From Podarcis erhardii (taxonomy: Eukaryota), in the NCBI GenBank assembly GCA_964252035.1, contig CAXUOO010000037.1: a DNA stretch of 64,000 bases. The stretch is one strand, 5' to 3'. Both the position numbers and the translations under genes were made by a program. This document shows positions 234-56,479 of the stretch, piece after piece. A model generated the notes under the pieces. It worked only from the letters and a program-made list of their open reading frames with translations. It searched no databases and had not been told where the DNA came from. Numbering within the stretch: position 1 is the first letter of the stretch; each line of letters starts with the position of its first letter.

Positions 234-1374
234 ATGGCAAGCGTTGCTCTTACTAGCAACACAGTAAGCGGGTGCTGCCCTGATAGCCTATTCAGAAATG
301 CATACTTTGTGTTTAAACAGTATTTGAACTGTGAAATATTTTTCAACAAGGGTTTCAACTGTCATGAATGCGACTCCTTATTTCAAAGGGCGAAACAGCG
401 TTTTTTGCATGCGTGGAAATTGCCAAAATCTAAAACATTTGAGAGATGCATTCATTTGAGGAAGGTGTTTGAAAGTGTTTTCGCCAACGAATCGATGCGT
501 GCTAATGAAAGCATCTCTCCCTCTTTCTTCCCCTCGTTTGAGAGTACCGCTGGGCTGACCAAGTGCGCCTACGTATGGCATTATCACTATCATGCCCCTG
601 TTACTGCCAGTATTGCAGCTGTTGCGCATCAGCAACTTACCAGCATCTCGTTGTTGTACAATGCGAAGCATCATTGGTGGAGCAACCAGCCTGTAGGACA
701 AAAGCTGCAGCGCCGATCCTTTTTGGTGAGGCAGAAACAGCAGCGGTCAAATTTTTTGCCGGAAAATCACCTGCAAGCGCTGACTCTGCATGTGCAGCCG
801 CGACTTTGGTATGATTTGCACTTGCACTGGCATTGCAAACAGTTTTTGAATATCGGGCAAGGCAAGCTGCAGCTACAGAAGGAAAGGATCTGCAGCGCAT
901 GCCAGGAGTTAAGAGTGCGTAGCCAGATTCAGGCCTCGCGTTTTCGCAGGTGCATGCAGCAACCGCAGGAGCTGCTGCGTGACAGCTTCCGGCGAAAGCA
1001 GATACATGTCGTCGAGGGTTTACAGAAGCAGATTCTGCAAAGGAACGGGCTGCTGAAGCAGCAGGAACACCAGCCTAATGCTGCTGGCTTTGCGCTGCAG
1101 TACCCAGAGCATTCTTATGGCAGATGCTCGCAAAACTATTCGGGAAAGCGGTTGTTTTCTGTCTTTCCGGCAGAGAAGAAGTTACAACGGAGTAACGGAG
1201 AATCACAGTTACGGTGTATATACACACCGGTATTGATTGTGGGCGCTGGCCCAGTAGGCCTTTCCTTGGCGCTGCTTCTCCATCGCATGGGAGTTCCCTG
1301 TATGATAGTGGAGAAGAATAGTGAAGCACGGTGTCAGCCAAAGGCCCACTACTGCAGCACTCGCTCGATGGAAG
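234..1374 (+). CDS. Monooxygenase exon 1 (Gln-rich N-terminal extension plus Rossmann GxGxxG)
   Basis: ORF 234-1382 ends in TPVLIVGAGPVGLSLALLLHRMGVPCMIVEK...STRSME. Donor is GAAG|GCGAGT at 1375. A later ATG could be the true start. Confidence 0.8.
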
Positions 1375-28935: not shown

Positions 28936-31900
28936 TTATGTGATGCTATCCCTGCTGCACCTTCTATTGTTGGTGTTTATACTCATATTGCTGTTGCTGC
29001 TACTGATACAGCAGCTGCTACTAGTGCCGTCCAGAGCATTAACGCTCTTGACACGAGTGCTGTTACTGTCGCTGTTGATACTGCCTCTCCTGTTGCTGCC
29101 ATTGCCAACGTTTTTGTTATCACTAGAGTTGCTGCTGTTGTTGCTGAAGTGGTCGCAACACGGCTGAGATAGTAGCTTTTCAATGGCTTGAGTAAGTGCT
29201 TGCTGTGCGTGGGCGGCTGCTGTAGTGTCCTTGAAGGCAACAGGAAATTTTATCGCTAGCCACTGATATAGATCAAGTACCTGATAATTTTCTTCTAATA
29301 GTTGCAGACGCTCAGAATACTGTTGAAAAGCAAGAGTTTCACTATTGAGGTATAAAGAGTCTCCACTGCTACCAGTATCACTGCTGCAATCAGTATCACT
29401 CGTGCTTCCAGCATCGCTGCAGAGAAGAGTGACGTTGCTTCTTTCCTCACAACCAAAAAAACTACTGCTTTTTTCACCAATCCGACCTGAAAAGTTATCA
29501 CCCAGTCTACGCGCTTTGTTCTGGGAAACATGAAGTGCACTAGCAACGGGTTCATCATAGAAGCTATCACGCTCATTACTTCTGCAGAGCGGTGCACCGC
29601 TGCAGCTACGATTTTTTTTCTCCCCGTTGTTTACAATACTAAAAGTATTTGGTGGTCGAAACCCCTCACTATTGGATAAGCACATGCCAAGATTGTCTGT
29701 AGAAGTCTTAATAGCTTCGAAGTTGCTAGTACTCTTATTGCGAATTTTTATGCTGCAACAGGAACCTTCGTTCCCTGTTGTGCCCTGTGGGTAATCCTCT
29801 GTGCAGCTCAAGGTGTCGTATTTGTAATCACCCGGGCTAGCGTTGAAATTAATTTTGTGGTGGCTTCTCGCGAGAATCGTACAACTGTTGGAAGAAGGTA
29901 TCACTTCACTGTAAGAAGCTTGGGCGTCGCCATCAGGATATGAATACTTTGTGTCTACATTCATTCCTCTTCTGCCGTTGCCGTCTGAATTTAATTTCAT
30001 TAGAGTACAGGAACCCATTTCATCTAAGCTGACCGAAGAGCTGAATACATTTCCAGTAGAAACTCCGCCACAACTAGTACTGCCGCTGGCTGGAGCAGCA
30101 CTGTACAAGCCATTTGCTTCAGCAGATGCGTTGTCCTGTGCAGCTAGCTCTCCTTTCTTGTATTCTAACAAGCGTTCTGCATGCGTCTGGAGACCTGTAC
30201 TTTTTCTTATAGGCCTTTGAGTAGGGTTGGTCATTGCTTTGCTACCGCAGTGAGTTAGCAGATCTGCACTTGTCTCGTTTAGGGTGTCGACTGTACAAAC
30301 ATCATGTTCCTCAGAAAGTGTAGACATATTGTTTTCAACATCTGAAGTATTCGCTCCAAAAGTTTGCTGACTAGAGGAGAAGTAGTGCTGATTCTCTTTC
30401 TGCTGCTGTCGCCACTGTTGAAATTGAGGTTGCTGCTGTCGCTGCTGCTTTGGAAGATGCTGCAGGTGTTGCTTGTTGTGATATGGCAATATCTGCGTGT
30501 GATGCTGCTGCCGTTCTAATTGTTGCTCTCGTTGATGCCACTGATATTGCAGTTGAGGTTGTTTTGTTTTTTGGTAATGTTGCTTTAGCTGTGGTGGATT
30601 GTCTTGCTGTTGCTTTAACTGCAGCAGTGGTGTGACAGCTTGAGATAGGAAAACAGATGGAATGGGCACAACGCCGCAAGTGGACAAAAGAATCGCGAAA
30701 AGTCGCAAAGCATTTAACAGCAGCGGGCTGAGACCAGCAGCAGCAGCAGCTGCAGAAGCGTTTCCAGATTCAGCGTTTGATTCCAAGCCAAGGCTTTTAT
30801 CCCACTGCCAATGCTCCACTGCTTCACTTCTCTCTTGTTCCCTCTGCTGACTTACCTCCGGACGGTGACCCGCTTCATCGGTCTCCTCGTCGTACACAGT
30901 TTTCATTTCACGGATTGGACTCGTTTCTGTGTCAAAACTACTTACGTTATGTACGAATGAATCATTCTGAATTTTTTCTGCGTACTCCTGATCGAAGAAT
31001 GCTGCTCTGTTTATGTCTCTGACAAAAAATACCTCTGATAGATCTGCTCGCACTGAACAGCCGTTCGGGAATCTGTCGTCTTTTTGTGTATTTCCTACTG
31101 TCTCCGTCTCTTCTCCGACAAAAGAAGAACTTCTTGTTTTGTTTGAAGGGTGAGACTCTGACACAACAGCGCCTGGACTGAAAGCGCCAGGAACACGCTG
31201 CATGTGATCACGGTGTTGGTGCTCGTGGCGTAGACGCTGTTGCAGCTGTAGATATTGTGGCTGCTGCTGGCAAATTTTTTTCGACAGAACCTGTTCTTGC
31301 AGCAAGTTTTGCCGTGTTGAGCACAGTTGCGTCTCTAGGGCGTGTTGTTGGTGCTGCTGCTGAAGTTGTCTCTGCCCGTGTTTAAATGGAGGCTGTAACA
31401 GCGAGCGTTCGAGCTGTTGCGACAATTTCTGCTGCTGTTTCTTTAGGACTGACAGGTGTTGTTGCAACGGCTGCTGTTTCAAAGGCTGTTGCTGCTGCAT
31501 CTGCTGCAGCGACTGCTCTTCGCCTTTTGTTTGTTTTAGATATGGAGTCGGCGAAGAAAGAGGTAGTGGAGCCCTGCAAAATGTTAACAGCTGTTTACGT
31601 GATAAGGGTATATCTGCGAGAGCATGCAAGACAGTAAGGGTGACATTCAGCTTATGAGAAGGTATAAAGAAAAGAGAGTCCACTGAAAGCATATTTACAA
31701 AATTCTTCAGAGCGTCGGCGTAGATCGAGAAAGAGGGCTTTTGCGGTTGCCGTTCCTCGTGAAATCCTTTCGCAGAAAACGTGCCTTTGGTGTTGTTGTC
31801 TTTGTGAGGCGTGCTACTGCTGCTGTTGTGCCTGAGCAACATTCCCTCTAGAGAGGGGGGCGAAGATGCTGCTACCTCTTTTTCCATCATTGCAGAAGCC

Positions 31901-32083
31901 TCAGTTTCCGGTGTACGTACACCAGCTTGTTGTTCCGAATAGCAAAATAAAGAACTTCCCATGCTTCTTCGCGCAAGCATCTGCAGCGAAATCTTCTCTT
32001 TCGATAATTCTTCGCAAAATGCCATAAACTGCGGCACTGTTGGCAGCAGTGCTGCGTGCGTGAGAGGGTCTGATGAGGGTCGC
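28936..32083 (-). CDS. SUV3: SUV3 terminal exon (poly-Gln insertions; Suv3 C-terminal domain)
   Basis: ttttag|GC acceptor; [14 protein letters not shown]; 1033-aa ORF with [25 protein letters not shown]...IEKLL. Needs one frameshift near 32078. Confidence 0.85.
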
Positions 32084-35000
32084 CTAAAAGAGAAGAATAA
32101 AAGAAACTGCAGGGACAGAGATATTACATATTTCTTAAAGAGAAATCTGCGTGTGGTTTGTCTGCGTCAGTAGAGATCCCTTTTGAACTAGGCACAACAT
32201 ACACAGATAAGGCGCTCGAAATGGTAAAATCAAATGAACACAAATGTAGAAAGTACACATTTGTGTGTGTATACATGTACAAATATTCCTTCAAGTGCAT
32301 TTGCTTACACGTGTATAGTGATACTCCTGTGAGCTAGATTTATGAGTAACTACGTGAATTAAAAGTATGCATGTGTAAACAAAAGAAAATGGCTCAGGAT
32401 ACCATCCGATATCGCGACGTAAGCGAATCATTAATTGTGCGAAACGCTTAACAATGTTAGTACACAAATTTTTTCTTGAAAGCATGGAGTGCTCTACTAC
32501 AGGCAATACACGCACATATACATGTATATATAGGAGTATGTAATTGATGTTGAAAACGAATACAGCGATTCTGGCGTACTCCATTCCAGTGGACGTGTTC
32601 ACCAGTTGGAATCTTTCAGGATACACTGACATAACAAAATTGTATACGCAAGCTTATATATATATATATATATGTATATGTATATAGATGTACTTTTGCT
32701 ATTAAAGAAACATAGCTGAACAGCTTGTGCAGATATGTACCCACACACTCCTATAAATGTACATATCTGGCACATATACACATATACAAGTATTTTATAT
32801 ATACATTGTGCTCAGCTTGTTGCTTGAGCGCGAAGCAGTACTTTGCTACTCAGATGCATATGTGTCTTTCACTCGTACAAACAAAGGTAAACAGGTATCT
32901 AGCATATATGGAAGACTTAAGACTCAGGCGCCCTGCGTAGCGCATAGAAGCTTTTGATGACAGAGCCAACACGAAAAAGTATTCCAGCCGGCAGCAAACC
33001 TCTCTGTACACAGATTGGGTGAGTGGTTGCGTTAAATTTGGTCAATTTTGTACGTAGAACGGAGTCGTGAAGCACAGTACCCTATGCCCGATTGATAATA
33101 CATAGCGACATCGAGATACAGCTAGTGATAGTGAGGTGCAATTTCACAATAGATTGGGAACATGACTTCAATTGCAAAGAATCACATTTATACGGAAATA
33201 CGTAGTACCCAAGTTTGAACAAGTCGAAAAAATATGGATCACGTCTGCAAACACATGCAATAAACGTCGAAACTGATTAAAAGCAGCGTAAAGAGGACCT
33301 TCAATAGCGTCTTTGAGCCTTTGAAAATCTTCACCGTGAAAACAAGTGACAAGTCCTCCTTCCTGCCCAAATACGCCTCCGCGTCTGCCGGCTCTGCCAC
33401 CCAGTTGCCGCAACTCCGCTGCTGTGAGTGGTTTATACGCATTTTCGCTGTCACCGGTAAATTTGTGCATTTTATAAAAAACAATTCGCTTTATATGAAG
33501 ATTCATTCCCAACCCTATTGCATCAGTCGCCACCAAAACTGGAGCGGCTGCATTTTTTCCGCTTTGAGTCCTACTGCCAACTACTGCAGGTATCCACTGA
33601 TGAGGAGTGCTCAGAGCTGTTTGAAAAGAAGCAGCGCAGTCAGCAACTTTGCTTGCTGAAAGTGCTGGGCGTGCTTCTAGTGCATGTGCCTTCGCTGATG
33701 AAGCAGTTGTTGGCATCGACGAGGGTGAAGCAGCTGCTGGAGCTGCTATCACAGGAAAAGCATCTGTGTGAGCTGCTGCTGTTGCTGTGATTGCGGCTGC
33801 TATTGACGCTGTAGCTACTGAACCTGCAGCAGCAACTGGCGCTTTGGCTTTGGTTGCTGAATTGAAACGACTGGCTTCAACTGCAGCAGTAGACGGTTCA
33901 GCTAAAGCAGCTCCACATCCTGCAGCAGCAAAAGCATGAGCAGCAGTAGTATTCGCAACAGCAGCAGAAACAGCAGGTGCAGCAGCATTCGTCCACGCAG
34001 CAGCAGTGATAGTAGCAGATTCTGCAGGTGGCGCAGCTTTTTGAGCAGCAGAAATAGCAGAGCATGAGGCAAAAGATGGAACAAAGCCGAAAGTTGGAGA
34101 ACCTTCACTGGCCCCGATCCTGACAGAACTAGCTGCAATCGCAGAAGGAGAGTTCTCATGTGAAGCTCCTTGATCCGATGCTTCTACCGCGCTGTCGCTG
34201 TTCAACTCGTTCGACGACGAGTAAGCAGCCGTGACTGCTGCATTGAAGAGCTGAGCTTGCTGCTGCTTGGTTGAAGGAGGCAGTTGCCCGTATATGACGT
34301 AGACGGAATACCCTAAAGTTTGCAACTCTCTCTTCAACTTCAGTACGTCTGCACGAGTGAAACATACTAGACAATCTCCTGCTTTCAGCTCATCCAGACT
34401 CTTGATCGGCCCAGTGTCCATCTGAGTCGACAAAGTCAAGCCATGTTCATACTGCATAAAGCACTTTTTTTGCAAAATGACAAGAAGCACAGTTTGTACC
34501 GGTAAGTATCGAGCGCATATCTAAGAGTACAGAATCCACAACAGAAAACTATCTATACTTCGATGAATACACACTTGAGAAAATACACTCAAAAAACATC
34601 TGTCTGTATTATATTCTATTTACAAGGTTTGGAGTCGAGCGAGACTCCTAACAGCCAAATCTCAAGAGAGTCATTGAAATGAGATGAGTGTGCATGTGTC
34701 CTGACTTTATAAAAGGCGTGTCTTTTAAGGGTAAAACATGTGCAAAAATCCCTGCGCCTGTGCGCAGATGATTATTTGTGTGAGAGTTTGATGTTCATGC
34801 ACCAGAGTCATGCTTTTTCAAATTTAGCAATACACGAGGATCTACTCCAGTAAGTCAGATGAACGACAGTGTGAAGCACTACATGCAGGTAGCGACCGTT
34901 CTGAAGAACTAAGAGACAAAGTCAAATTTACAGTTGCGGAGATTAAAACATAAACTTTCCGAAAACCAGGAAAAACACAAACGGACTAGCTGCTTCTTCT

Positions 35001-42200: not shown

Positions 42201-44982
42201 TTGCAGTGTGATCGCATTGACGTGTAAGTTTGCTTCGGTCGTTGTTTTACAGAGAGAATCTCAAAGTTATCTCACTTCAACCAATTACCCTATTGCTGCT
42301 GTTGACACACCGCTAGATCTACGGTTGCGGCCGCCGCAACTTCAGGTATGTCGGTGTTGGCTGGTTTTACGCTGCAGCTACAGCTGCCGGTATCCTTACA
42401 GTTTCATAAGTGTTCCAGCAGAATCCTCCTGTAGACGTTGAGTCACTTTCCTCTTCTGTGCTCTCACTGATCCTGGTGTATTCGTGAAATAAAGTTTTTT
42501 CACGTGATTTCTCAGCATCCAGGGCTTCAGCCAAACCTTCTTGCAGGGAAACAGCTTTACCAAAAAGGCAATCTCTCAGCTGTTTCAGTAAAAGACTAGT
42601 ACTTTTTGTCTCTCTGTGTGCGCCTGCGTACAATAGTTCCCTGTACAAGATGCTGCATGCGCTCCTGCTGCTTGGCCTGCTAGACCAGTTGTAGCTGTTC
42701 CACCAAGTGCAGCTGTTTGGTCTACTCCTACCGCTGGTGAGATATGTGAAGACTTCAGCGCCAAGACTGCACTTGGCACTTCTACTGCTGCAGCTGCTTG
42801 TAATGCTGCTATTCCGGCAGGTGCTGCTGCTTCAGCACCTAGTTTAGTGAGATGGTAAGGCAACTTGCTTCTAGGACTATCTGTACATGATAGATTTGAA
42901 TACGTGTTCTTGCGGGTATTTGATGGACGTGCTCGCACCACTGCTGATGAGAAGCGGGGAAATTCAATGTTTTGTTCGTGAAAGCTGCAGGAAAAGCCGA
43001 GCCTTCGCTGAGACTGAATGCGTTCTCGATTACGCGCTTGAAATAACGCAAACAGCTTCTCATTACTGCTGGATGCCGCAGCAGGAGGACAGGCAGACCC
43101 CACTTTTTCTGTAAATATTCACAGAGACTATCGTTCTGCAGTAGTGTTTGCCACAGTTTGTCGAATTCTTTTTCCTCCAGTGGTGTAAGTGGCGTTATTT
43201 CTACTTGCCTATTGTAAACTTCACAAATGTTCAGGTTTTGCATTTGTATATTTTGCTGAGTTGATGAGTGTGAACAATGTCCTTTTGACTCTACTGCACG
43301 AATCATTTCACACCTACGATCATCTGCTGTTTCCACCGAGGGATTTGCGTTGTACAAATGCTCTATTTTAGTTTTTTGAAACACTGCGCTGCGGCAATCA
43401 TTTTCCTCTTCTACTACGTCCTTCCCACCTGATGCACGTGTTCCGGTAGGAACTAGGGGTAAAAAGTCTTCTTTTTCCATATCTGCTGCGTGAATTGCGG
43501 CGTCTGTCGCAGCCGCAGCTGCGGCACCAATTGTCATTTGGTTGGAGGGACTGCCTGCGGCCTCTGACGCTGTCGCGGTATTTGACGAACAAAAAAGATG
43601 ATTTTTACTGGGCCGCGTAGGCGCTGCCAGTCGGATTGTCTCTAACGTCATCGTCTTCTTCCTCCTAGCAGCAGCTGCTGCAACTGACATTATCTGTTCT
43701 TCTGCTGAATGTGACTTATTGAAGGCAGTTAATAAAGTTCTGGATGCACAAGCGGTATTCATTGCCCCTTCGAAAGCTGCTTGAGCTTCTCCACGGTTGA
43801 GACACGTATCTATGAATGCCTGCTTATTTGTTGCTTCCTTGCTGCTGGCGAGGGTGAAGAGGTCGTAGTAGAATAAACGACACCAGTAGCATAGCAGTGC
43901 GATTTATCACTATAAAGACAATCTGCAGAATCTGGCGACGCTGAAAAAGTGTTCAGGAAACCAGCTTTTGCATGTGGAGGACTGCTCGTGGAGCTAGAAA
44001 TGCAAATCATTTCTTTTGTCTCTGTTGATAGACAATTTGCTGAGCTGGGAATGTCTATACCAAACATCTTGCTTGTCTGTCTTGCAGACGACGCCCCTGT
44101 ATGATGTGCCATAGCTGTATCCTCCTGAAATGCTGCACGAGAAGGATGCTCAGACAACGATATGCCTGGAGCCGTTCTTGTGGTATTCTCCTCCGGGGCT
44201 TTACGAAGCAGTTGTCTGGATGAATTATGTAGATTGTTAGAATCCTCTGACAAGATAACGCGAACTGCCGAGGACTTCTGAGCACCACTCATCCACGCAC
44301 ATGCACCAACACCCTCAGGAATACGTGGCAGTGGCGTCCGGAAGTTGTGCTGCTGACGCACATATTCATGTACCCCGTCATACTGGGTTGCTGTACTGCT
44401 ATGTGTCGATAGTTCAGAAATCTGCTGTTCTCTTTTTGATGCCGCTCTCGACTTCGCATAATTGCGCTGCTGTATCGCTGCTCGAAAACTGGCAGTTTCT
44501 TCAAAAAGGTGCAGGTAGCGTCTTTCCAAGGAAGTTCTTGATTCTGCAGAGGCTTGCTGGTGCGTTTCTTTCCATGATAAGGTTTGCTTTGCTAAGTCTT
44601 GCTTTGCTAAGTCTTGCTGCCTTCTTACTTTATGCGTAGATGAACGATGTGAAAGAGTGTGCTGATACTTTTCTTCTATTGTAACTCTTGCTATGGCAAA
44701 GTCTTGCACCTGATTTCGTATTAATATACGAGTTGATGTGTTCAACTCTTGTCGCCTTCCAGTTTCTAGGAAGATTCTCAGGTCTGCAATACAGCCTTTC
44801 TGTTGCACAGTTCGCGAAATTCTATAATCTGTGGTGTTTTGCTTGATACCGGACTTCCTGTAAAGAAGCAAATTATTTGTCAGCGTAGGAAGGTGCAATA
44901 ACGGTTGTGAATTAGCACATGCAAATGAAGCCCGCTCTAAATGTAGTTGCTGAAAGCTCAGGTTCGCCGCCGCCATGATCAT
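28936..44982 (-). CDS. SUV3: SUV3/SUPV3L1-like mitochondrial ATP-dependent RNA helicase; multi-exon gene span
   Basis: [23 protein letters not shown] (Walker A), [80 protein letters not shown] and C-terminal [19 protein letters not shown]. Exons: ~44982-42289 (frameshifted), ~41760-41532 (tentative), 41103-40891, 39434-39195, 36641-36504, 35428-35312, 34421-33299, 32083-28936. The start is uncertain. Confidence 0.92.
33299..34421 (-). CDS. SUV3: SUV3 exon (RecA2 domain with Ala-rich insertion)
   Basis: actcag|ATG; [35 protein letters not shown]. The donor GAAG|GTCCTC is less certain. Confidence 0.88.
35312..35428 (-). CDS. SUV3: SUV3 exon
   Basis: ttacag|GCG; [39 protein letters not shown]; AAA|GTAAGT. 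Confidence 0.9.
36056..36310. repeat. ~115-bp tandem duplication interleaved with (TA)n tracts (SUV3 intron)
   Basis: ttgtatgtatgtatactat.tgagtata.atgcgccgatacaaaaaaaa at 36109 and 36224, flanked by (TA)n. Confidence 0.9.
36504..36641 (-). CDS. SUV3: SUV3 exon (Walker B); not in ORF track
   Basis: tttgtag|GGG; [46 protein letters not shown]; CCA|GTAAGC. Confidence 0.9.
39195..39434 (-). CDS. SUV3: SUV3 exon (Walker A, motif Ia)
   Basis: ttgcag|GAT; [31 protein letters not shown]...[10 protein letters not shown]...TGQERRLCQ; CAG|GTGAGC. Confidence 0.92.
40891..41103 (-). CDS. SUV3: SUV3 exon
   Basis: cttgcag|CTG acceptor; ...[19 protein letters not shown]; GCC|GTAAGT donor joins in frame to DLRSP. 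Confidence 0.8.
41532..41760 (-). CDS. SUV3: Tentative SUV3 exon
   Basis: Phase-2 acceptor ctag|T matches the upstream phase-2 donor, and the frame is open ([15 protein letters not shown]...). The donor position is weak and uncertain. Confidence 0.35.
42289..44982 (-). CDS. SUV3: SUV3 long N-terminal exon (several frameshifts)
   Basis: Chain of overlapping long ORFs in different frames (43810-45054, 42839-43762, 42585-43103, 42367-42648), ending at donor GG|GTAATT. Contains helical-looking [26 protein letters not shown]. Confidence 0.6.
44583..44617. repeat. 15-bp coding tandem duplication (QDLAK x2) in the SUV3 N-terminus
   Basis: ttgctttgctaagtc occurs twice. Confidence 0.85.
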
Positions 44983-47594
44983 TGTGCCTGTTGAAACGCA
45001 TGTGATAGTCAAAGAGAGCCAGTGTTTGTGTGGTACATTGCATGTTTGTCGCACTGATACTTCAAAACGTCTCTAACTTAAGTTCAGTTTGGTGATGTTG
45101 CAGCGTGTAATACTGAAGAATTGGAGGTGAAACAAGATACTTGAGTTTTTCAGATTCTGAATGAGAAGCTTCTTGTTTTTCGTCTCCTCATCGAATTGTG
45201 TTTTCATTTGATGTGTACTGGTATCGACCAACAACAACACAATCATACAGAGATTGCGGATGAGCGCGAGATCCCCAAAATGGTGACGAGGACGTGTGAA
45301 GAAATTGAATAATATAGAATTTCCCGGCAATAAGTGACCCGCACTGTCGGAAGGTGGCCCATAAGCTTCAACCGTTTGTACATGCAAGCGGCCAGGATGT
45401 TTGGTCGAGGAGTGGAATATACGTAAGGGATAGAAGCAATTGCTCTCTGATATTTGAGTGTGCACTGAAATGACACGGCTTAATACAGAAAACCTGTGTT
45501 TGTCATGCTGCTGGAACAAGGGTATATAATACACACTTATTGTGAAAGGGTAGAATTTGAATGGAAGCTCATTCTCCAGGGAAAAGAATGCCGCGATCGC
45601 AGGAGAGCGTGTGTCAAAAAGAATCAATATTGACTAGCTTTCTTGTGCTCGAACCCTTAGCGCTCCTCCCACTTGCGCAGCTTATCTGGACGAATGTAAT
45701 TCTCTATCACTGCATCATCAACTTTCGGTAACTATTGGTGTCCCTCGGATGTAAAATATGTCCGCTCGACCTCTGCAATAAGTTCTAAGAAATATTGTCA
45801 GACACACATGCAGAAAAGGCGAGCAGAAAGAAGGGATGAACAGCGCAGACAGTTGATGATATAAGCAGGTAACTGTCTGGAGTTGTTGAGAAATGCTAGA
45901 TCTTTTCACTGTAACAAAACGAACAAGGATTTGAAGGCCCTTACAAGCTGGAGATCGTCACTGAAAAGCAGCGCTGTCTTCATATGCATAAGAACAGGAG
46001 GAGGAAGTGTGTTACAAAGTGCAAACTAAGTGCAAAGCCCAGAAATCCCCAACAAACCTTTCTTGGGAATTTCTGGGCTTTGCTCTACACCATAACAATT
46101 TGCATATCGAGTGCCTTGTCGTCGACTAGCCTTTATCATGCATGCCACTGTAATGCACTAAGATCAGGCCCTATTATGTTTCCACGTCCTTATGTGCGTT
46201 TACCCTTGAATTTTATACAATCTGTCGGTGTCGTCGTGTGTAACGCCAGCGTTCGCCAACTGGGCCATTTTGTAAAGCTTCATCAGAAAGCATGCGCGGG
46301 ACAACACGCTTGCATGTACCGCTCATTGCTTTGTTCGCATCGATGAGACCAGGAAGAAATCACGAAGTTTGTCAATCAGACCTTTGACAGATTATAAAAA
46401 CCAGCCTCTGACTCACAAATATGGCAAGATAGGAAAAACAGCTTGTCCTTTACAGGCAGGTGTTTAATGGCAACCGCTACCTATGACGTGCGCTCGATGT
46501 CTCCCCTTTTACTCCACTCTTGCTCCGTCCAATAATTTCTCTGGGTGTGCGACATTATGAGGCTGATATATGCGTTTTCGGATGGCGAAAGAGAGGATCA
46601 CTGTAAGCTCAGCCGTCATTCGCATTCGCAGCATTGAAATCCATCTCGTTTTTTCTGTGACATCACAACTGAGTTGTACCGTAGGATGTCTTTCGCAGCC
46701 GAATCACAATCGTATTTGCTGTGTAGGTTTCGACGAGCAGATGAAGGTTGGCGTGCTCTGATTGTTTCGTAAATGTCTATAATAAATGTGTCTGTTCTCC
46801 AGATATGGTAGCAGCATGCTTGATACTTCCGTACAAACTTTCGGAACGAAGATGTGGCGGCGACGAGGCTCATTGAGTACACTGATGAAACGAAAATCAT
46901 TCAAAAATTTTTTCTACTTTGTGAGTCGTTCTTCACCAAGCGCTAAAAGATGTCAGCAGGAGAACGCGAGCAGAATACGTAGTCTTGTAGCGCCTGTGTT
47001 GACATCGCCGGTTTTAGTGATTCGGTGCTTCGGTGTCCTGACAAACACCTGACTTTTACATTTTGAACTGTGTTGAGCACTAAACATAATTATGTGCCGG
47101 AATTTCGTCGATTTTTTGATCGAGATATATATATATATATAAGGCTTTTGAATCTTCACAGCGTCATGCGCTGTCGGCCATACATGCAATGTATTAACTA
47201 TTGTATATACACTATAAATGCAGATCTAAAATTTTGAAGTTCCTTGTTCCCTACGTGTGTGTAATTTTCGAGCGCTTTTGAGACTGCCTAGTTAGTGTAG
47301 ATGCTCCTAGGACGCTAATTTGCGTACCCTCTTTAAACACTGTACAACATTCGAGTACACCTTATCATACTAGAGAAAAAGGACAGATTCGGACAGGTGC
47401 CGCGGTCTCCAATCTGCCTAGCAATTTGATACGTCAGAAGCCCGCGTCTCACCTGCGTATCTTGAAGGACGCTTGGTGCTCGTCAACTTTATATATTATT
47501 TAGAGACTTACGACATACGATGGAGAACAATAGCACAAAAATTTGATGTAGAACAAACGCGACTGTCACTGAGTATCAACAATCGTCTTGAAAT

Positions 47595-48508
47595 ATGGTC
47601 GTGAAGCTGATAGTGGGAGAAGCTTTACTATTCTGCAGCGTTGCTTTCCAGGCTGCAGCCCTTCACTACTCTCAATTTCTTAGGTGAGCTAAGCACTGAT
47701 ACGCATACTCTCTGTTTCGCGTATCCTTGGACAGCATTGATACCCACGGTCGGGTGCGCCAGACTGTACCTTTATGTGCAGAGTTTGTAGTAAGGAAAAC
47801 TAAAGGAAAAAGCAATGTTACACAACTGATATCACGTATGCAGCCGGAATCTGCTGGACCGTCATCCAGATGTTGGTCCTCCTGCGCAATCACGCCAAAA
47901 AAGGCGGCATGTAACGATCAAGCTGAAAGTGAGCACTACCGAAGCAATGGCGCATTTATTTGCCTAGCATGGTTTCGTTCTATAGAATGGCAATATTTGC
48001 TGCAAATTCCCACAAAACCTTTTATGGAGCTGCCCTTTGGATATGCTGGTATACCCTGTATGTCTTGAAAACGATAAGTACAGCTGTTACAACCTTTTAG
48101 GCTGCCTCCTCACTGAAAAGCGATATCTTTGCACACTTTCAAAGACAACCAATGTGGAATGCCCTACAAACGCTGCAACTATGGTGAAACAAATCCGCCT
48201 AACACGAAATTGATAGAATAACTAATTAAGTTCGCAGGTCTCACCGGGAGCCACATGCTATACAGCATGCGGTGTACCAAGTTGCCCGGAAGGAGATTTC
48301 CACGAGTTGAACCCTTATACAGATTTTAAGGTACAAGAACTTACGGATAATTATCTAGACAGTCATACAAATCAAGACAAGTAATCTTCAGTTTTCCGGA
48401 TGCCAAGGCGGCGCTCATAGAACCAGATGCAAAAAAAGGGGAGGAGAGCATGTTGAAACGCTGACAAAAAACATTGTACCAATACCAAAAACGCTCCCCG
48501 TAGAGTAA
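47595..48508 (+). CDS. Hypothetical secreted cysteine-rich protein, 5 exons, 191 aa
   Basis: Exons 47595-47683, 47735-47928, 48101-48183, 48238-48330 and 48392-48508 total 576 nt. All four GT-AG introns (51, 172, 54, 61 nt) are phase-compatible with no internal stop. N-terminal hydrophobic signal-like segment MVVKLIVGEALLFCSVAFQAAA, then 12 Cys. Confidence 0.72.
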
Positions 48509-49096: not shown

Positions 49097-50173
49097 TCAA
49101 AGCCTAGTATTTTCATCCAGTGAAAGTTTGTACCGGATGTAGGAATAATACGATATGCCGACGATCGAAGCGACTGCAAGAGATATACATGACACAAAAC
49201 CGCTGAAGCATATTTGAAGAAAAAATATAGGTGATGAATGCAATACGAGGGAGCTCAAGCAGCAGAGAACATAATTACCTCCCATATTTGAATGCGGGAT
49301 GTACAATATATAGGGTCGTGTATGTCACGAAGACGCTGGAATGCTTACCTATGCCGAAAATGACGCGGTAAGTCAACAACTCACCGAAGATTACCTGAGC
49401 ACCCAACCCACAACAAATTTCAATATATTAGTACCAAAACAGTTCTAAACTGTTTTTTGTTATCAGCGACCGTTGCTACAGGAATCTACCGATCCAATTT
49501 TCAAATTTCTCCGGCCTTAAACTTGCGAAGCTCCGCATCAGATGCAAAGCGTTGCGGAAAACATTCCACTATACATATATATATGTATATATATACGCTA
49601 GCTCAATATAGCCAACAATTTTTAAACAATGATACATATATATATATATATATATTTATGTATACTCCAAGGATGTGTAGCTATTGGTGAACGGAAAATT
49701 TCAGCTATATTAAAATTTGCGAATGTTATTAGAACAAGTTTTTCGTGCAGTTTAGCCAAGAGCTGATAATATATATGCGAACCTTCAAAAGCCAGGAGCG
49801 GCAGAAGAACAGAGTGGCAACGTAAGCGTATTCAATATCTATTTATATAATTTATATACGTAAATTTTATGTAGTCCTTACAGCAGACATCGAAATCGTG
49901 AGAATTTCTTTCCCCAAACCCGCGACGCAGAGAGACACCGAGGAGGTCAACCCTGATACAACGACATACCGAATAAAGTGAAGAAGTGCGTGAAAAGGTC
50001 AAACCTAATACAACGACGAGCTGCATAAAGTATTGCAGTGCCTCATAACTCATAATGAACACATTCGCGGAGTATACAAAATTAGCAATATGATAACGTC
50101 GGGAAATATCACATGACAAATTTGACACACGCTACATAGGTAAACAAATCAAAAGAATTATAACACCTACATA

Positions 50174-50215
<42 letters not shown>

Positions 50216-53200
50216 TGACTACGTCTAGTATTCTTTTGTGGTAAGTCTGCCCTGCACTGCCTCATTGCAGAGGTGATGCAACGCACGCGATCTCGTTCAC
50301 CGCTCGATCGTGCGCATACTGAAAGGCAGCATAAGATCATAAGAAAGTTTCGAACAATTCGATCCCTTTGGACACCGCGCTAGAAATATGAAACTTTTGG
50401 CAGCAGCGTTTTGGGACAATCTATGCAGAAACGTCTGATCATGTGCTTGTATAAATCCAACCCAATGTAAGTCTCAAACTAGGCAGACGTTGATACAGTC
50501 CTATACGATACGGCCTAATGCAGTAACCGCCTCTCAATTTCAGAACGGCGAACTCAGCAGTAGTGTAACCAGGAGACAGACACTATTAAATAAAAAAAAT
50601 AACACAACAGCAGCCACGACAGAGGCATCTAAACAGGAGCCATAACATGTGATTCAAAACGCTGCGTACGATTCGTACAGCGATATTCCACAATTTGATT
50701 GAGATGTAAAACTTACCAACAACTTGCAACTCCGAAAGCACCACCATTGCCGCCATGAATACACAGCCAAAAACGATACTAACTGCAGTGATGAAACGGT
50801 CATAGGCCATGCTGCCGATTACTACAGCTCCTGCACAGTACAACACATGAGAAACACACACTCCAATAATCCACTGATCAAAATATCTTTCGCTAAAACC
50901 TGTTTAATAAGCAGATTCTCTCCAGAGATTCTTAACAACAGCAATCCTCTTCCGATATGTATATATGCAGAAAATGAAAATGGTGTTGCGTTTTACTTAC
51001 ATAAGCAACGTCAAAAGCGCACGGATAGAGGTATTTTATGAGAACACTCTTTTCGAAGAATGTTGCTACAAAGGGTCTGCAACTCCAGTATAAAAATGAG
51101 CCATCATTACAACGCTACGCATGTGCAGAAGAAGTATACAGGGCTACGTTCGCTGGTGTTGCCACTGCTGAAGCCTTTGCTATCTTCACCGACTTGGAAA
51201 CAAGAGAGCAGCAACGCGTTTGCTAAATTTTGGAAGACCAAAAGTCTTCCCAAACTCGTATAAAGAAGTAGATCCTGTGTTTTTTAGTATGAAACAACTG
51301 TTATTTTGAGCATGAAAAGAGAATTCTCGTGGAAGCTTTTTTTGTTTTCGAGCTCCTTAGATCTAGGAGACCGCGCACTGATGTAAAATACGCGCCAACT
51401 GCAGGATATAGACCACGATGCAAGCACCTTGACAAATAATTACTTTCATATGAACTAATCAATCAAGATGTCGTTCTAGAATAATCGCTTTGTAGAAAAG
51501 GTTTGCGCTCACCTCTAATCATGTTACGCGTGGTTTGTTTCACGTGATATTCCATTTTCAATAGAAACGACGAAGCAGCATCAGAAAGGAAATCAACGAC
51601 GCCAGAGTAGCATCAACTGATACAACAACATATCTACTACTATCTTTGCGCTTTGCCGCGAGACTACTTGGAGCAATCTATGATAGTGAACTAAACTTAG
51701 CCTCGTGCAAAAACTCTGCCCTTCAGGACGCCTATAACATTAGCCTCTTCGTGAAGCAAGTGCGAGACGCAGCTTTTATTGTTCTTGGAATCAAAGAAAC
51801 TAAAAAGTGGATTGCCAAACAGGAGTTTGTCTACATTATAAACGTGCTTTTCCAAGCAGTTCGTCTGTATCTACGAGATATGTATGGGTACCTGACATGA
51901 GTGCGCATACTAAAGTGAAACGCACGCCCAATCACGAAAAGATGCAGTGTTCCGTTGCATCATAAAACTAACCTTGACATTTCAGAAAGAAGCGAATTTA
52001 GCTATCTGCTTGAAGCCGCATGTAATCGAATCTGACTGTAAAGCTTTGTCGAGGATCTCATATGCTCGGAAATTGCGAAGGTAGTTGCGTTACAAAGTTA
52101 GTATAAAGGCGCGGAAAATTTTGATTGGTACACTAAGCCAAAATAAACGTGCAAAAGTGTGCGTACAAGAGACCTGCTGGTTTCTTTTCAAACCTTGTTA
52201 CATAAAGACGCGTTTCACGATTTTCACTTGCGTTACCGTTTTTGAACGCTTGTCTGATAACGATGGGAAGTTCGTAGAAAACGACTACGGGAGAAAGAGC
52301 AATAGTAGAAAGGGGATGTGTCAATAGAAGCAACTGTAATATTGAGAGGTGGCGATCGCGCTTCAGCGTGCGGTGAATGAGAATCCATCGCATAGCCCCC
52401 ACCAAGACTGCACCGAAGGTTATGGCTACACTGAAGAAAGCAGCAGAGTGCACGATGTACAACACCAGCACACAGTGTAATCAACTGCTGAAAATGAAAG
52501 GTACGCGTTCTAGTGTTAAAAAATCAGCGAAACAACGAAAAAGCGACATTACAAACACTGAGGAAAACATGTTGCGAGTGAATCAAAAAGCCGCTACAGC
52601 GGCACCTTTATAACGTAGACAAATAGTATATACACGTACACGTACGTGTACGTATGCACATACCATATATTTTGTGTTGACATTATCTCAACGTATACGG
52701 TGAAGATGAAAGAACGACAATTCAAGGATCAAATAATATGCGAAAATCTTCTACATAAAAGGCGCCGCCGTGGGTCTGTATCACAAATAAGGACGAAATA
52801 CGATAAGAATATACACAAGATTTGTATATTCACATGTGTACAAAAAAGTCTTCAATTTGCGCATTTTCGAGGAACTCATGTTTTTGTATACGATTAGTGC
52901 GGAAGGGAACGAAAGCAGGAGACGTTACAGTAGTTGCGCAGAGACACGTGAAAAAACCAGAAAATCGAAGAAATGAAAAGAGGCATCTCACCGCTGGCAC
53001 GGTAGAGAACAAGAAGTCAATGCGCTTTTAGTTTTCGTGAGGCCCACTCAGGAGGAGTTAGCGATGAACAGCAAAACAGCGAAAACAAGCACCATATATT
53101 GAGTCTTATATTGAAGGAATAAGCAAACTTTGACCATAAAAAGTGTATCAGCTGTTGTAAATATACAGAGGATATCACAACCAGTGTTCAAAACGCGGAG

Positions 53201-54793
53201 TTCATGTTAGTAAGCACTTGTGGTAACGGATGCGTAGGTTTCGTGCGAAACGCAGTTGAGGCTCTGCTAGGAGCTAAATTGCATTTTGGAAATGTACAAG
53301 TGTGCAGACAATTGTAAGCATACACTCTGTGGTGTATACCTAATGACTGTACACAAGACACCTGTGGATTTAAAGATTCTATACAACTATGTGAGTATAG
53401 TTTAATAACTTTATGAGTTTGCGGAAGCCATCCGGGCAGTGTCAACTCAGCGCAGACTAACCCCGTGGAACTTTTGATTTCCATTTCCGGAAGCGTTAGA
53501 GAAATACTTAAAATGATGAAAATCTGCACGCATAGGGTCTCACACATGGATGGCCTACGTAATTCTCAGGGATACGAATCTTAAGACAACATAAACGTGT
53601 AAGTCTACATATATATATATATATATCTATGTATGTTGACAGATAGAGCAAAAAAAATCTTAGGTTTCGATGCGATATACAAAGTGATAGAAATTTTTTT
53701 AGAATCCCGCAGTCAGCCGAAAGCGAACTGGGAAGAATACTGCAACATAACGATATAGTAAGGTCAAAAAATATACTTGATACAACCACTGAACCAGCAT
53801 TTCATCTGAACATACTCACACGAATGTAAGCAAGCTGACTCATGATATTTTCCCAAACCACTGAGTGTGGCAGCAAAAAACCTGCATGGTTGTATACATA
53901 TCAGTTTGTAGAACAATTTCGAGTTTTTGTGATGAAAAGAATTCATGCAAGTAGACATTGTATCCCCTGTTCAAGCGCCTGCGCGCTTTAGAAAACTGCA
54001 TTAAACTTGTGCTAATGTGGTATGAAACCTTCTATTGACCAACTATACTGTAGTTCACGCATGCCTCTGTACATACGTTCATAATATACATAATTTATAG
54101 ACAAACAGATACGAAAACCTATGTGCATATACAAACGTATAAATACCCGCACAATGATTACTCCAAAATGGATAGCTCGCTACAATCCGACGGCCCACTA
54201 CTTTTCTTAAGTATATGTGTGTATATGTCTCTGCGTAGACATTAAATTCTCGTGCTTACTTGTGTATACAATTTTATACATATACACATATACATACATA
54301 TATGCAAATGCACCAGGAACATATATAGCTGAAGTATACATATATATTTTTTTTATGTTATTAGTTTATGTACATATCGTCCTATATGCAAGCACGCTAC
54401 CGTCTTACCAGGATAGCGATGATTCGCAGCCGAAAATGTTCCAAACCTACAAAACAAAAAAATCTCAGCATTTAATATGACATTTCATCAACGCTGACAG
54501 GCTATATTTCACTAACCACCTCGAAGCACCAAATCTGTCTGTAAACTTTGAAATTACTTTCTCTAGATGTAAAGCATTCGTCAAATGCTATGATTCAATG
54601 TCCGTAAACTAGGTATTACCTCATAGCACACGTCACTCAAATATTTATACGTTGTACATGCATAGATTTAAATAGCTGGAGAAACGAAGAGGATAGTTCT
54701 GAGAATAATTTTCATGTATAAACCTTTTGTAAATGTTTAGACGCAAAAATCAGACCATTCTTAGCATGAGTATTTACTCTTTACTATATACAT

Positions 54794-54829
<36 letters not shown>

Positions 54830-55021
54830 TTTATGTGTGCTGTGTGCGTAGTTTGGCCTGGACAGTAATCTGTGATTACGTATGTACACATAAAAAAACG
54901 AACCACACTCAAGACATATAGCAACGTGCAGAGGCTATTCCAGCTTCTATGCAAAGTGATATTGTGTATACGCGTGGAAGAAAGACATGTAATATATATT
55001 GATATCCAAATAGATAAGAAG

Positions 55022-55064
<43 letters not shown>

Positions 55065-55332
55065 GTGTATTATATGTATGAATGTGAATCTGTGAAAAGA
55101 AAAGGCGTGTCTCAGCGACTTCGAATCTACTTATTTATTTCACGCTGTAGCTAGAAAGCTTTCTCGATTACTCTAGCAGACAAGGAAAAGTAGCTGCCTG
55201 AAGAAAACACGAATATGTACTGATAAACGTGTCCAACATAATCTTCGCCCTCACAAGTCTTACTTCATTCACATGCATACATATATATATATATATATAT
55301 CTTATCCCACATGCATAGTCTTCAATCTTCTG

Positions 55333-55371
<39 letters not shown>

Positions 55372-56479
55372 GTATTTCGCAAGTTGGGAATTGAATTTTG
55401 CCTCGTTGACTAGTGTTTTATGTCGCTATGAAAGTTTTCGTGCGAGGCTGTCTCTAGCTTTTAGTTTTGATGCGTCAATTCACACGCCCAATATATTGTC
55501 GCGCATACACACAGCTGTAGATGTACACGCATGTAAATACAATCTAGAATCAGAAAAAACAAGGTTGATGGAATTATACATACCCTGTACTTTGCAAGGA
55601 GCGCAAGTAGCACTTACCCCAACAAACGGCGAGTAGGTAAGTGAAAAAAACTGAAGAAGACTTGACAAGTGTGATGGCGGCTACGGAGATGAAACGAAAA
55701 GCAATATTGGTGAGAGAGACATCAGCAGCTGCACAAAGAGCTATTGGTAGAAGCGTGTAGGCGATGTAGGAAGCAGTTAATTTGTGTAGAGGAGGCAAGG
55801 CCGAGGGGAAGCAGAAGAAACAGAGTCTGAGAGCGAGAGAGGCGAAAGAGAAGTGCAGAAAAGTCACGAAGAGCGGTATGGGAAAAGCCAAGATATCGAA
55901 CAAGTATTTGTTCGAAGCAGTCAAAACCAAACTCGACATATACCACACGCCCACGCTCAGAAGCAGCTGCAGAAGTTCTCGACCGGACTCTGTCGAGAAC
56001 GCCTTCAGTCCCCCTTCTTCTTCTTCGTCGTTTTCGGCTGTTGCCGCTGCCATTTCTGCAGCTCGCTTCTGTCTCGCCTCTGCACTACTGTGCGGAGTGA
56101 GCTCTATTATCGCACCTCTTTTGGCAACTCCTTCCAAAGCTTCTGCTGCTGGCAGTGCTGTTGTTGAGCTTGCTGCTGCAATACTTGTCTTTGTTTCTGC
56201 AATTTCTGTGCAGACTGTGACAGCGCAACTCGTCGTCAGTTCGTTGCAGGCAGCGTTTTCATCGACTTGCCTGTAAGTTTTGCTGCTGTTGCGCCACCTT
56301 CTTTTGCTGCGCCAACTGCTGCTCTTGCTCCTGCTAACGCTGCAGCTGCTGGTCTCTGTTTCGTCTCCAAAGCTGCGCAGAAACTTCGACTTTCTGCTGC
56401 TGTGGTGGCTGCTGCTTTGCGTACTGCTGCTGGGGCTGCCGCTGCTGCTATGCAGCTCATTTCTATGCACTTTCCTCAT
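49097..56479 (-). CDS. Triose-phosphate-transporter family / SLC35C2-like nucleotide-sugar transporter, 8 exons
   Basis: Exons 56479-55618, 54446-54409, 53523-53462, 52430-52237, 50830-50717, 49952-49882, 49394-49349 and 49173-49097, all phase-compatible GT-AG. Motifs WYMSSLVLTASNKYLF, FPIPLFVTFLH, DVSLTN, TLVKSSSVFF, WGLE, GAMRWILIH, LTSSVSLCVAGLGKEILTI, VIFGE, GISYYSY. About 10 hydrophobic segments. The start codon could differ slightly (e.g. 56460). Confidence 0.9.
50177..50213. repeat. (TA)n microsatellite
   Basis: Perfect dinucleotide run in a transporter intron. Confidence 0.95.
52237..52430 (-). CDS. SLC35/TPT transporter exon 4
   Basis: ttcttcag|T; VAITFGAVLVGAMRWILIH...HPLSTIALSPVVVFYE; G|GTAACG. 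Confidence 0.85.
55024..55062. repeat. (TA)n microsatellite
   Basis: Perfect dinucleotide run in a transporter intron. Confidence 0.95.
55618..56479 (-). CDS. SLC35/TPT transporter exon 1
   Basis: ORF 55574-56479, with a Ser/Ala-rich N-terminus followed by TM1-4; TGG G|GTAAGT donor. Confidence 0.88.

What the first reader, a model, noticed from the sequence alone, without database searches (positions are those of the whole stretch)
47595..48508. Hidden 5-exon gene for a small secreted protein with 12 cysteines and no recognisable family
Seen: only exon 2 appears in the ORF track. Four short GT-AG introns join into a stop-free 191-aa protein: MVVKLIVGEALLFCSVAFQAAALHYSQFLSIDTHGRVRQTVPLCAEFVVRKTKGKSNVTQLISRMQPESAGPSSRCWSSCAITPKKAACNDQAESCLLTEKRYLCTLSKTTNVECPTNAATMVSPGATCYTACGVPSCPEGDFHELNPYTDFKFSGCQGGAHRTRCKKRGGEHVETLTKNIVPIPKTLPVE. 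It has a signal-like N-terminus, an even count of 12 mature Cys, two C[WY]xxC motifs (CWSSC, CYTAC) suggesting an internal repeat, and no TM or GPI tail. The compact introns lack the TA repeats seen in neighbouring genes. Inference: a disulfide-rich secreted protein (microneme adhesin, gamete or oocyst-wall type). Resemblances to MAR (CxxCGxxxCPG), PAN/apple, TSR (CxGGxxRxRC) and OWP (CPxG) motifs are only partial, so it may be an undescribed family.
Basis: partly seen in the sequence, partly recalled or inferred. Interest (0 to 1): 0.7.

Follow-up and report, generated by a model that had tools for sequence, protein, structure and literature searches.

The report
Toxoplasma-family secreted cysteine-rich protein gene
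The hidden gene is real: it is a lizard-associated coccidian's copy of an unstudied small secreted, cysteine-rich protein already annotated as "hypothetical" in Toxoplasma and its close relatives, but it has seven (or six) exons, not five.

Summary
A stop-free GT-AG path is not evidence by itself: 56-58% of all ATGs in the window can be extended to the same length.

Homology settles it. A library-wide phmmer search with the visible ORF found Besnoitia BESB_008870. That led to Toxoplasma gondii TGME49_232700 (193 aa), Hammondia HHA_232700 and a Neospora protein. The Toxoplasma protein aligns colinearly to the window with E 1.3e-37 and 59% identity.

The alignment corrects the model in two places:
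- A 54-nt stretch of his exon 2 (47790-47843, GTAAGG...CAG, GC 0.35) has no counterpart in any orthologue and is probably a further intron.

The revised gene has 7 exons, 585 nt, 194 aa and introns of 51-61 nt. All 12 mature cysteines keep exactly the Toxoplasma spacing.

The protein looks like two copies of a 6-Cys module. It has no Pfam, PDB or literature match.

Verdict: a new member of an annotated but unstudied Toxoplasma-subfamily orthogroup. Function is inferred only.

The parts
47595..47683 (+). Exon 1 (89 nt): start codon and hydrophobic signal-like N-terminus
   Evidence: ATG at 47595 with an in-frame TGA at 47589-91. The donor is TAG|GTGAGC, and the unspliced frame stops at 47685-87. 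Kyte-Doolittle 12-residue maximum is 2.2, similar to the orthologues at 1.8-2.4. About 30 residues precede the conserved S-I-D-T, as in T. gondii.
47684..47734 (+). Intron 1, 51 nt, GTGAGC...ACAG
   Evidence: The junction gives split codon AGC (Ser), matching the Ser before I-D-T in T. gondii.
47735..47789 (+). Exon 2 (55 nt): carries Cys 1
   Evidence: Aligns to T. gondii residues 32-49.
47790..47843 (+). Probable intron 2, 54 nt, GTAAGG...TGCAG. The alternative is an in-frame 18-aa lineage-specific insertion.
   Evidence: No counterpart in any orthologue: T. gondii residues 49|50 are contiguous across it. GC is 0.35, like the other introns. Length falls within the 51-61 nt range of the other introns. 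Removing it restores the conserved C-x13-C spacing. Codon score does not discriminate. No RNA data.
47844..47928 (+). Exon 3 (85 nt): P-E-S..C-W-S-S-C..C block (Cys 2-4)
   Evidence: 18/28 identical to T. gondii residues 50-77. This is the part that matched in the phmmer search.
47929..47985 (+). Intron 3, 57 nt, GTGAGC...CTATAG
   Evidence: Appears as a gap in all three orthologue alignments. In-frame codon score is -0.325. An alternative acceptor at 47967 would give a 39-nt intron plus 6 extra residues, which I judge unlikely.
47986..48048 (+).
   Evidence: The W-Q-Y-L-L..P-x-x-P-F..G-Y block aligns to T. gondii residues 79-97 (10/19) and Besnoitia (12/19). It restores the conserved 27-residue Cys4-Cys5 spacing.
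48049..48100 (+). Intron 4, 52 nt, GTATAC...TTTTAG
   Evidence: Split codon GGC (Gly) matches the Gly before Cys 5 in Besnoitia and Neospora.
48101..48183 (+). Exon 5 (83 nt): Cys 5-7
   Evidence: 16/25 identical to T. gondii residues 100-124.
48184..48237 (+). Intron 5, 54 nt, GTGAAA...CGCAG
   Evidence: Contains in-frame stops and appears as a gap in the tblastn alignment.
48238..48330 (+). Exon 6 (93 nt): C-Y-T-A-C-G-V-P-S-C-P block (Cys 8-10), the most conserved exon
   Evidence: 21/28 identical to T. gondii residues 130-157.
48331..48391 (+). Intron 6, 61 nt, GTACAA...TTCAG
   Evidence: T. gondii residues 157|158 are contiguous across it.
48392..48508 (+). Exon 7 (117 nt including stop): G-C-x-G-G-A-H-R-T-R-C basic block (Cys 11-12) and the conserved C-terminal L-P-V-E
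   Evidence: 21/36 identical to T. gondii residues 158-193, ending at the same L-P-V-E-stop.

Best explanation
Window 47595-48508 (+) holds an intact spliced gene of a Toxoplasma-related coccidian that was co-assembled with a wall lizard. It is the orthologue of the uncharacterised T. gondii gene TGME49_232700.

Best model: 7 exons, 585 nt, 194 aa and six tiny GT-AG introns of 51-61 nt.

The product has a cleavable-looking hydrophobic N-terminus and no other hydrophobic segment. Its ~170-residue mature part is built from two tandem 6-cysteine modules (C-x13-C-[WY]-x2-C-x4/8-C-x18/27-C-x8-C) and ends in a conserved arginine/lysine-rich block and an L-P-V-E tail.

Shown: the gene, its orthology, the exon content and the cysteine framework.

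Inferred:
- It enters the secretory pathway, forms six disulfides, and acts outside the parasite cytosol as a compact binding or structural protein.
- The conserved H-R-T-R-C-[KR]-[KR]-R patch is a plausible polyanion (for example glycosaminoglycan) contact.

Stage and compartment are unknown.

The confidence given (0.8) is for the gene and its orthology together with at least six of the seven exons. The seventh-exon call alone is about 0.7. The secreted binding or structural role is about 0.5.
For: - phmmer of the 113-aa ORF against 1.84e9 proteins found B. besnoiti BESB_008870 at E 4.9e-6, with 59% identity over the exon-3 block.
- A word search from that hit found T. gondii TGME49_232700 (E 5.8e-65 to Besnoitia) and a Neospora protein. 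Cluster members add H. hammondi HHA_232700.
- tblastn of the T. gondii protein against the window gives E 1.3e-37 and is colinear, with gaps exactly at the proposed introns.
- Exon-by-exon identity is 99/167 = 59%, and the exons map to contiguous T. gondii residues 32-49, 50-77, 79-97, 100-124, 130-157 and 158-193.
- All 12 mature Cys, with spacing 13,3,8,27,8,9,13,3,4,18,8, are the same as in T. gondii once the revised model is used.
- N-terminal hydrophobicity is conserved in kind across orthologues, and AF2 gives a helix at residues 3-23 of the T. gondii protein. UniRef names the T. gondii protein 'Secreted protein'.
- Two-module repeat: local alignment score 43, P 0.002 by full shuffle and 0.015 with Cys fixed.
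Against: - No RNA evidence.
- The 54-nt intron 2 could instead be an 18-aa insertion: it is stop-free, its length is a multiple of 3, and its codon score matches the exons.
- Exon 1 has only weak sequence similarity to the orthologues.
- Signal peptide and secretion rest on hydrophobicity heuristics and database names, not on a predictor or an experiment.
- The structure model is unusable (pLDDT 35.9), so the fold and the binding role are speculative.
- The gene ID was not found in the held supplement text of a tachyzoite spatial-proteome paper or of several stage-transcriptome papers. Those files may be truncated.
Confidence: 0.8

Rival explanations
1. Six-exon variant. The gene is as described, but 47790-47843 is coding: a lineage-specific 18-residue basic loop between Cys 1 and Cys 2. 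That gives 639 nt and 212 aa.
For: The stretch is stop-free, its length is a multiple of 3, and its codon score (-0.008) is like that of neighbouring exons. The Neospora model reads S-E-H-I-P-E-S without a break, so the T. gondii group probably has no intron at this spot.
Against: It is absent from all four orthologues. Its boundaries are a consensus GTAAGG donor and a CAG acceptor. GC is 0.35, intron-like, against 0.41-0.53 for the exons. Its length matches the other introns. It would break the C-x13-C spacing shared by both modules and all orthologues.
Confidence: 0.25
2. The reader's exact 5-exon, 191-aa product is the real or main mRNA, with exon 4 skipped and the 54 nt retained.
For: The path is in frame because the missed exon is phase 1 to phase 1. 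Skipping could occur as a minor isoform.
Against: The skipped 63 nt encode a block conserved in Toxoplasma, Neospora and Besnoitia. A 172-nt intron would be the outlier among 51-61-nt introns. The Cys4-Cys5 spacing would fall from the conserved 27 to 6.
Confidence: 0.04
3. The protein is a very divergent thrombospondin type-1 repeat (TSR) protein, as the automatic UniRef name of the Besnoitia orthologue suggests. On this reading it would bind host sulfated glycans in the way TRAP, MIC2 and CSP TSRs do.
For: UniRef names BESB_008870 'Thrombospondin type 1 domain-containing protein'. Two motifs recall the TSR C-S-x-T-C-G-x-G-x3-R-x-R-x-C signature: C-Y-T-A-C-G, and G-G-x-H-R-T-R-C with alternating arginines (reading).
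Against: Pfam TSP_1 gives no hit at E<=10 for any orthologue or exon. There is no W-x-x-W ladder. The two motif halves lie about 25 residues apart and on different exons. The protein has 12 Cys in two ~60-70-residue modules rather than 6 in ~55 residues. No PDB sequence or profile match was found.
Confidence: 0.1
4. Chance reading frame or dead relic: no functional gene.
For: Stop-free spliced paths of this length are available from most ATGs. Codon bias is weak. No expression data are available.
Against: tblastn E 1.3e-37 to a protein of another genus. All 12 Cys and the C-terminus are conserved. All splice sites are canonical. There is no frameshift or stop in any exon.
Confidence: 0.03

Closest known systems
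Toxoplasma gondii TGME49_232700 (XP_018636806.1; UniRef A0A125YMF7 'Secreted protein') and Hammondia hammondi HHA_232700, both 193 aa
   Same: Length is 194 against 193 aa. Both have a hydrophobic N-terminus and identical spacing of all 12 mature cysteines. Identity is 59% over 167 aligned residues. Both end in L-P-V-E.
   Different: The signal-peptide sequence has diverged. The window's gene has a possible extra 54-nt intron or 18-aa insertion. It comes from a different host system, a parasite found with a wall lizard. No function is known for either protein.
Besnoitia besnoiti BESB_008870 (XP_029222554.1, 171 aa) and Neospora caninum BN1204_032655 (CEL67466.1, 214 aa)
   Same: Same orthogroup, 54-58% identical to the window's exons.
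   Different: The public Besnoitia model lacks the exon-6 equivalent: it has 9 mature Cys, and part of the replacing segment matches the window's intron-5 read-through. The Neospora model lacks the exon-2 equivalent (11 mature Cys) and has a long N-terminal extension. These are probably annotation errors rather than biology.
Apicomplexan cysteine-rich adhesive modules (TSR, PAN/Apple, MAR, oocyst-wall-protein repeats)
   Same: Small, secreted, disulfide-rich modular extracellular domains of about 6 Cys. There are partial motif resemblances and a basic patch.
   Different: No Pfam model of any of these families matches at E<=10, and the spacing differs from each. The comparison is to what it may work like, not a claim of membership.

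Membership tests
TGME49_232700 orthogroup (Toxoplasmatinae hypothetical secreted protein) | Significant colinear sequence similarity over the whole mature protein | tested here: met
   tblastn E 1.3e-37. The six mature-part exons map to contiguous T. gondii residues 32-193, with 59% identity.
TGME49_232700 orthogroup (Toxoplasmatinae hypothetical secreted protein) | Twelve mature cysteines with spacing 13,3,8,27,8,9,13,3,4,18,8 | tested here: met
The T. gondii spacing comes. The window's spacing, summed exon by exon, is identical under the revised model.
TGME49_232700 orthogroup (Toxoplasmatinae hypothetical secreted protein) | About 190 aa with a hydrophobic N-terminus and a conserved L-P-V-E C-terminus | tested here: met
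   194 aa, hydrophobic maximum 2.2, and exon 7 ends in L-P-V-E-stop.
TGME49_232700 orthogroup (Toxoplasmatinae hypothetical secreted protein) | Conserved synteny and intron positions with the T. gondii gene | not testable with these tools
Thrombospondin type-1 repeat (Pfam TSP_1, PF00090) | Match to the family profile | tested here: not met
   No Pfam hit at E<=10 for P0002-P0004 or for any exon.
Thrombospondin type-1 repeat (Pfam TSP_1, PF00090) | W-x-x-W tryptophan ladder followed within one ~55-aa unit by C-S-x-T-C-G-x-G-x3-R-x-R-x-C | tested here: not met
   Reading: there is no W-x-x-W, and the C-x3-C-G and R-x-R-C pieces are separated by about 25 residues.
PAN/Apple, MAR and oocyst-wall-protein Cys-rich repeats | Match to any Pfam profile of these families | tested here: not met
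   No hits at E<=10. No PDB sequence or profile match either.
PAN/Apple, MAR and oocyst-wall-protein Cys-rich repeats | Characteristic fold | tested here: inconclusive
   The AF2 model on a 9-row alignment gave pLDDT 35.9 and pTM 0.16, too poor for a fold search.

The most novel reading that the evidence does not exclude
The TGME49_232700 family is an unrecognised, lineage-restricted extracellular domain type. It would be a tandem pair of ~60-70-residue 6-Cys modules with a new disulfide fold, confined to Toxoplasma-like tissue-cyst coccidia and now extended to a reptile-associated member. On this reading it acts as a stage-specific secreted ligand-binding or wall protein.
Probability: 0.4. 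Interest if true: 0.45.

Novelty: new member of a known kind. Interest (0 to 1): 0.3.

Why it matters
The result gives a corrected gene model for an unannotated parasite locus. It adds a distant fifth sequence to an orthogroup that so far held only very close relatives. That sequence pins down which residues are constrained: 12 Cys, the C-Y-T-A-C-G-x-P-S-C-P block, the basic R-x-R-C-[KR]-[KR]-R patch and the L-P-V-E tail.

It also exposes probable errors in the public Besnoitia and Neospora models and reveals a two-module architecture.

The protein is a reasonable candidate for localisation and knock-out in T. gondii. Nothing here shows an unusual mechanism.

Tried and rejected
No orthologue DNA, intron positions or synteny could be read.
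- All searches used single exons or the natural ORF by reference. One search concatenated the in-frame codons of the five exons inside a script, only to compute one pooled codon score. Nothing was translated, searched or printed from it. This means no SignalP-like run, exact-sequence look-up or structure prediction of the window's own protein was done.
- Word search with exon 2 (lengths 62-198 aa) found nothing.
- Word search with the TPT neighbour found nothing at E<=1e-3 and was wasted.
- Pfam on the exons and on the orthologues: nothing.
- PDB by sequence and by profile: nothing.
- ESM Atlas: nothing usable.
- AF2 on the T. gondii orthologue with the family alignment gave pLDDT 35.9, so no fold search was run.
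- The top phmmer hit P0001 (1102 aa, 16 stretches) is a translated tandem repeat whose score is inflated by repetition. I rejected it as a homologue.
- There are no paralogues and no repeated DNA of this locus in the window.
- Literature: no paper text holds the gene IDs. Supplement text of five Toxoplasma papers holds no '232700', and two further papers had no held supplements.
- Codon statistics were too weak to decide between intron and insertion for 47790-47843.

Full report
**1. What is in the sequence**

The coordinates and arithmetic of the finding are right.
- ATG at 47595 is preceded by an in-frame TGA at 47589-91.
- The five stated exons have phases 0/2/1/0/0 and are each stop-free in phase.
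- The four introns (51, 172, 54, 61 nt) start GT and end AG.
- The sum is 576 nt, i.e. 191 codons plus stop.
- The locus has no tandem or TA repeats, while TA microsatellites lie at 50177, 54785, 55024 and 55336.
- There is no Rfam match in the window.

**2. Is that more than chance?**

On its own, no. I wrote a memoised path search over GT-AG introns of 45-180 nt, with at most 4 introns.
- From 56-58% of all ~2,250 ATGs on both strands of the window, a CDS of at least 576 nt can be built.
- When donors must match at least 3 of 6 consensus positions and acceptors must be YAG, the figure is still 13-14%.

A codon log-odds model trained on the window's long ORFs is weak evidence.
- The null of stop-free stretches is -0.127 with sd 0.196.
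- Untrained neighbouring ORFs score 0.03-0.04.
- A comparably hydrophobic N-terminus occurs in 6% of ATG-started stop-free 29-mers.

So the model needed outside evidence.

**3. Context**

Earlier notes of this scan say the assembly is a wall lizard's and also contains pieces of a Toxoplasma/Eimeria-like coccidian. There were no earlier notes on this window.

The window fits the parasite.
- It has a 1033-aa single-ORF SUV3-type helicase.
- It has FAD-binding monooxygenase exons.
- It has a TPT-family transporter exon.

The candidate sits in a ~4-kb gap. On one side is a minus-strand Ala-rich gene (42.4-45.6 kb, divergent). On the other is the minus-strand TPT gene, whose hydrophobic-looking ORFs may extend down towards ~50 kb (convergent). 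None of those ORFs matched Pfam.

**4. Homology**

Pfam on the five exon peptides gave nothing. A word search with exon 2 (candidate lengths 62-198 aa) gave no candidate.

Because the claim rests on absence of relatives, I ran the library-wide phmmer with the natural 113-aa ORF, by reference.
- One hit, P0001, is a translated tandem repeat with 16 matched stretches. I reject it.
- The other, P0002, is Besnoitia besnoiti BESB_008870: 171 aa, E 4.9e-6, 59% identity.

Searching from P0002 found T. gondii TGME49_232700 (193 aa, E 5.8e-65) and a Neospora caninum protein (214 aa). Cluster listing added Hammondia hammondi HHA_232700 and several T. gondii strains.

tblastn of these proteins against the window gives E 1.3e-37 for T. 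gondii. The alignment is colinear on the + strand from 47733 to 48505.

**5. The corrected gene model**

The alignments have gaps exactly where introns are proposed.

- With acceptor AG at 47984-85 and donor GT at 48049-50, this is a 63-nt exon (47986-48048), flanked by introns of 57 and 52 nt.

(b) The 18 residues encoded by 47790-47843 have no counterpart in any orthologue. T. gondii residues 49 and 50 abut across them.
- The stretch begins GTAAGG and ends TGCAG.
- It is 54 nt long and has GC 0.35, against 0.41-0.53 for the exons.
- I therefore call it an intron, at about 70-75%. The rival is a lineage-specific in-frame insertion.
- Codon statistics cannot tell the two apart.

The revised model is seven exons:

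| Exon | Coordinates |
|---|---|
| 1 | 47595-47683 |
| 2 | 47735-47789 |
| 3 | 47844-47928 |
| 4 | 47986-48048 |
| 5 | 48101-48183 |
| 6 | 48238-48330 |
| 7 | 48392-48508 |

- Total: 585 nt = 194 aa, against 193 aa in T. gondii.
- Introns are 51, 54, 57, 52, 54 and 61 nt.
- Exon-by-exon identity to T. gondii sums to 99/167 = 59%. It is 58% to Neospora and 54% to Besnoitia.
- An alternative acceptor at 47967 would give a 39-nt intron and six extra residues. I consider that unlikely.

**6. The protein**

The T. gondii protein has 12 mature cysteines spaced 13,3,8,27,8,9,13,3,4,18,8.
- Summing residues exon by exon, the window's revised model gives exactly the same spacing.

The pattern splits into two 6-Cys modules: 13-3-8-27-8 and 13-3-4-18-8.
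- A local alignment of the two T. gondii modules scores 43.
- That score is reached by 0.2% of full shuffles and 1.5% of shuffles that keep the cysteines fixed.

The best-conserved parts are:
- the C-Y-T-A-C-G-x-P-S-C-P block (exon 6);
- the G-C-x-G-G-x-H-R-T-R-C-[KR]-[KR]-R block;
- the terminal L-P-V-E (exon 7).

The N-terminus is hydrophobic in all orthologues, and AF2 predicts a helix there. There is no second hydrophobic segment.

**7. Comparison with known families**

- No Pfam family matches any orthologue at E<=10. That includes TSP_1, PAN, MAR and oocyst-wall models.
- There is no PDB relative by sequence or by profile.
- The ESM Atlas gave nothing usable.
- UniRef's automatic name for the Besnoitia protein, 'Thrombospondin type 1 domain-containing', is not borne out by the features I could test: no W-x-x-W, split motif halves, and no profile match.
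- AF2 on the T. gondii protein with the 9-row family alignment gave pLDDT 35.9, so no fold search was meaningful.
- No paper text in the library contains the gene IDs.
- The held supplement text of five Toxoplasma proteome or transcriptome papers does not contain '232700'. Held files may be cut, so this is weak.

**8. Mechanism**

Shown:
- a conserved, intact gene;
- a hydrophobic N-terminus;
- a fixed 12-Cys framework in two modules;
- a conserved basic patch.

Inferred:
- co-translational entry into the ER and formation of six disulfides;
- secretion or storage in a secretory organelle or wall;
- action as a compact binding or structural protein, with the arginine-rich strand as a plausible polyanion contact.

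Which stage and which compartment are unknown.

**9. Limits**

- The only concatenation was of in-frame exon codons inside a script, to pool one codon score. Hence there was no exact look-up, signal-peptide predictor or structure prediction for it.
- No junction is confirmed by RNA.

**10. Verdict**

This is a real gene. It is of modest interest.

Noticed in passing
P0002 (B. besnoiti BESB_008870) and P0004 (N. caninum BN1204_032655): The public models look mis-spliced. Besnoitia lacks the exon-6 equivalent, has 9 mature Cys, and part of the replacing segment matches the window's intron-5 read-through. Neospora lacks the exon-2 equivalent, has 11 mature Cys, and carries a 38-aa N-terminal extension. 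The window's gene supports the 193-aa Toxoplasma/Hammondia model.
   Followed up: partly
P0001 (1102 aa, top phmmer hit): This is a translated tandem repeat (~60-aa unit containing A-C-W-S-S-V). It scored E 7.6e-20 only through 16 repeated short matches to the C-W-S-S-C region. It is a false positive of repeat-inflated scoring.
   Followed up: yes
window 28936-34490 (-): SUV3-type RNA helicase. A 1033-aa ORF carries the SUV3_C domain, and an upstream 440-aa ORF carries Helicase_C. They are probably one gene with an intron or gap at 32038-33167.
   Followed up: no
window 234-1382 and 9947-11362 (+): Two ORFs match the N-terminal and middle parts of the FAD_binding_3 profile (aromatic-ring/kynurenine-type monooxygenase) about 8.5 kb apart. 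They are either one gene with very long introns or two genes. The GC-rich ORFs at 4.9-8.8 kb in between are unexplained.
   Followed up: no
window 49800-56479 (-): TPT-family transporter gene. The first exon, 55574-56479, has a long Ser-rich N-terminal extension. Hydrophobic-looking ORFs at 52133-52471 and 50586-50861 may be further exons, though none matched Pfam. Perfect (AT)n microsatellites lie in the intervening DNA at 50177, 54785, 55024 and 55336.
   Followed up: no
window 42367-45627 (-): A chain of long low-complexity, Ala/Ser-rich ORFs with no Pfam match lies divergent to the candidate gene. It is probably a coccidian-specific 'hypothetical' gene that shares the 45.7-47.5 kb promoter region.
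   Followed up: no
window 47684-48391: All six introns of this gene are 51-61 nt. The neighbouring TPT gene appears to have introns of hundreds of nt with TA repeats. This is a striking within-locus contrast in intron size, and I cannot explain it.
   Followed up: no
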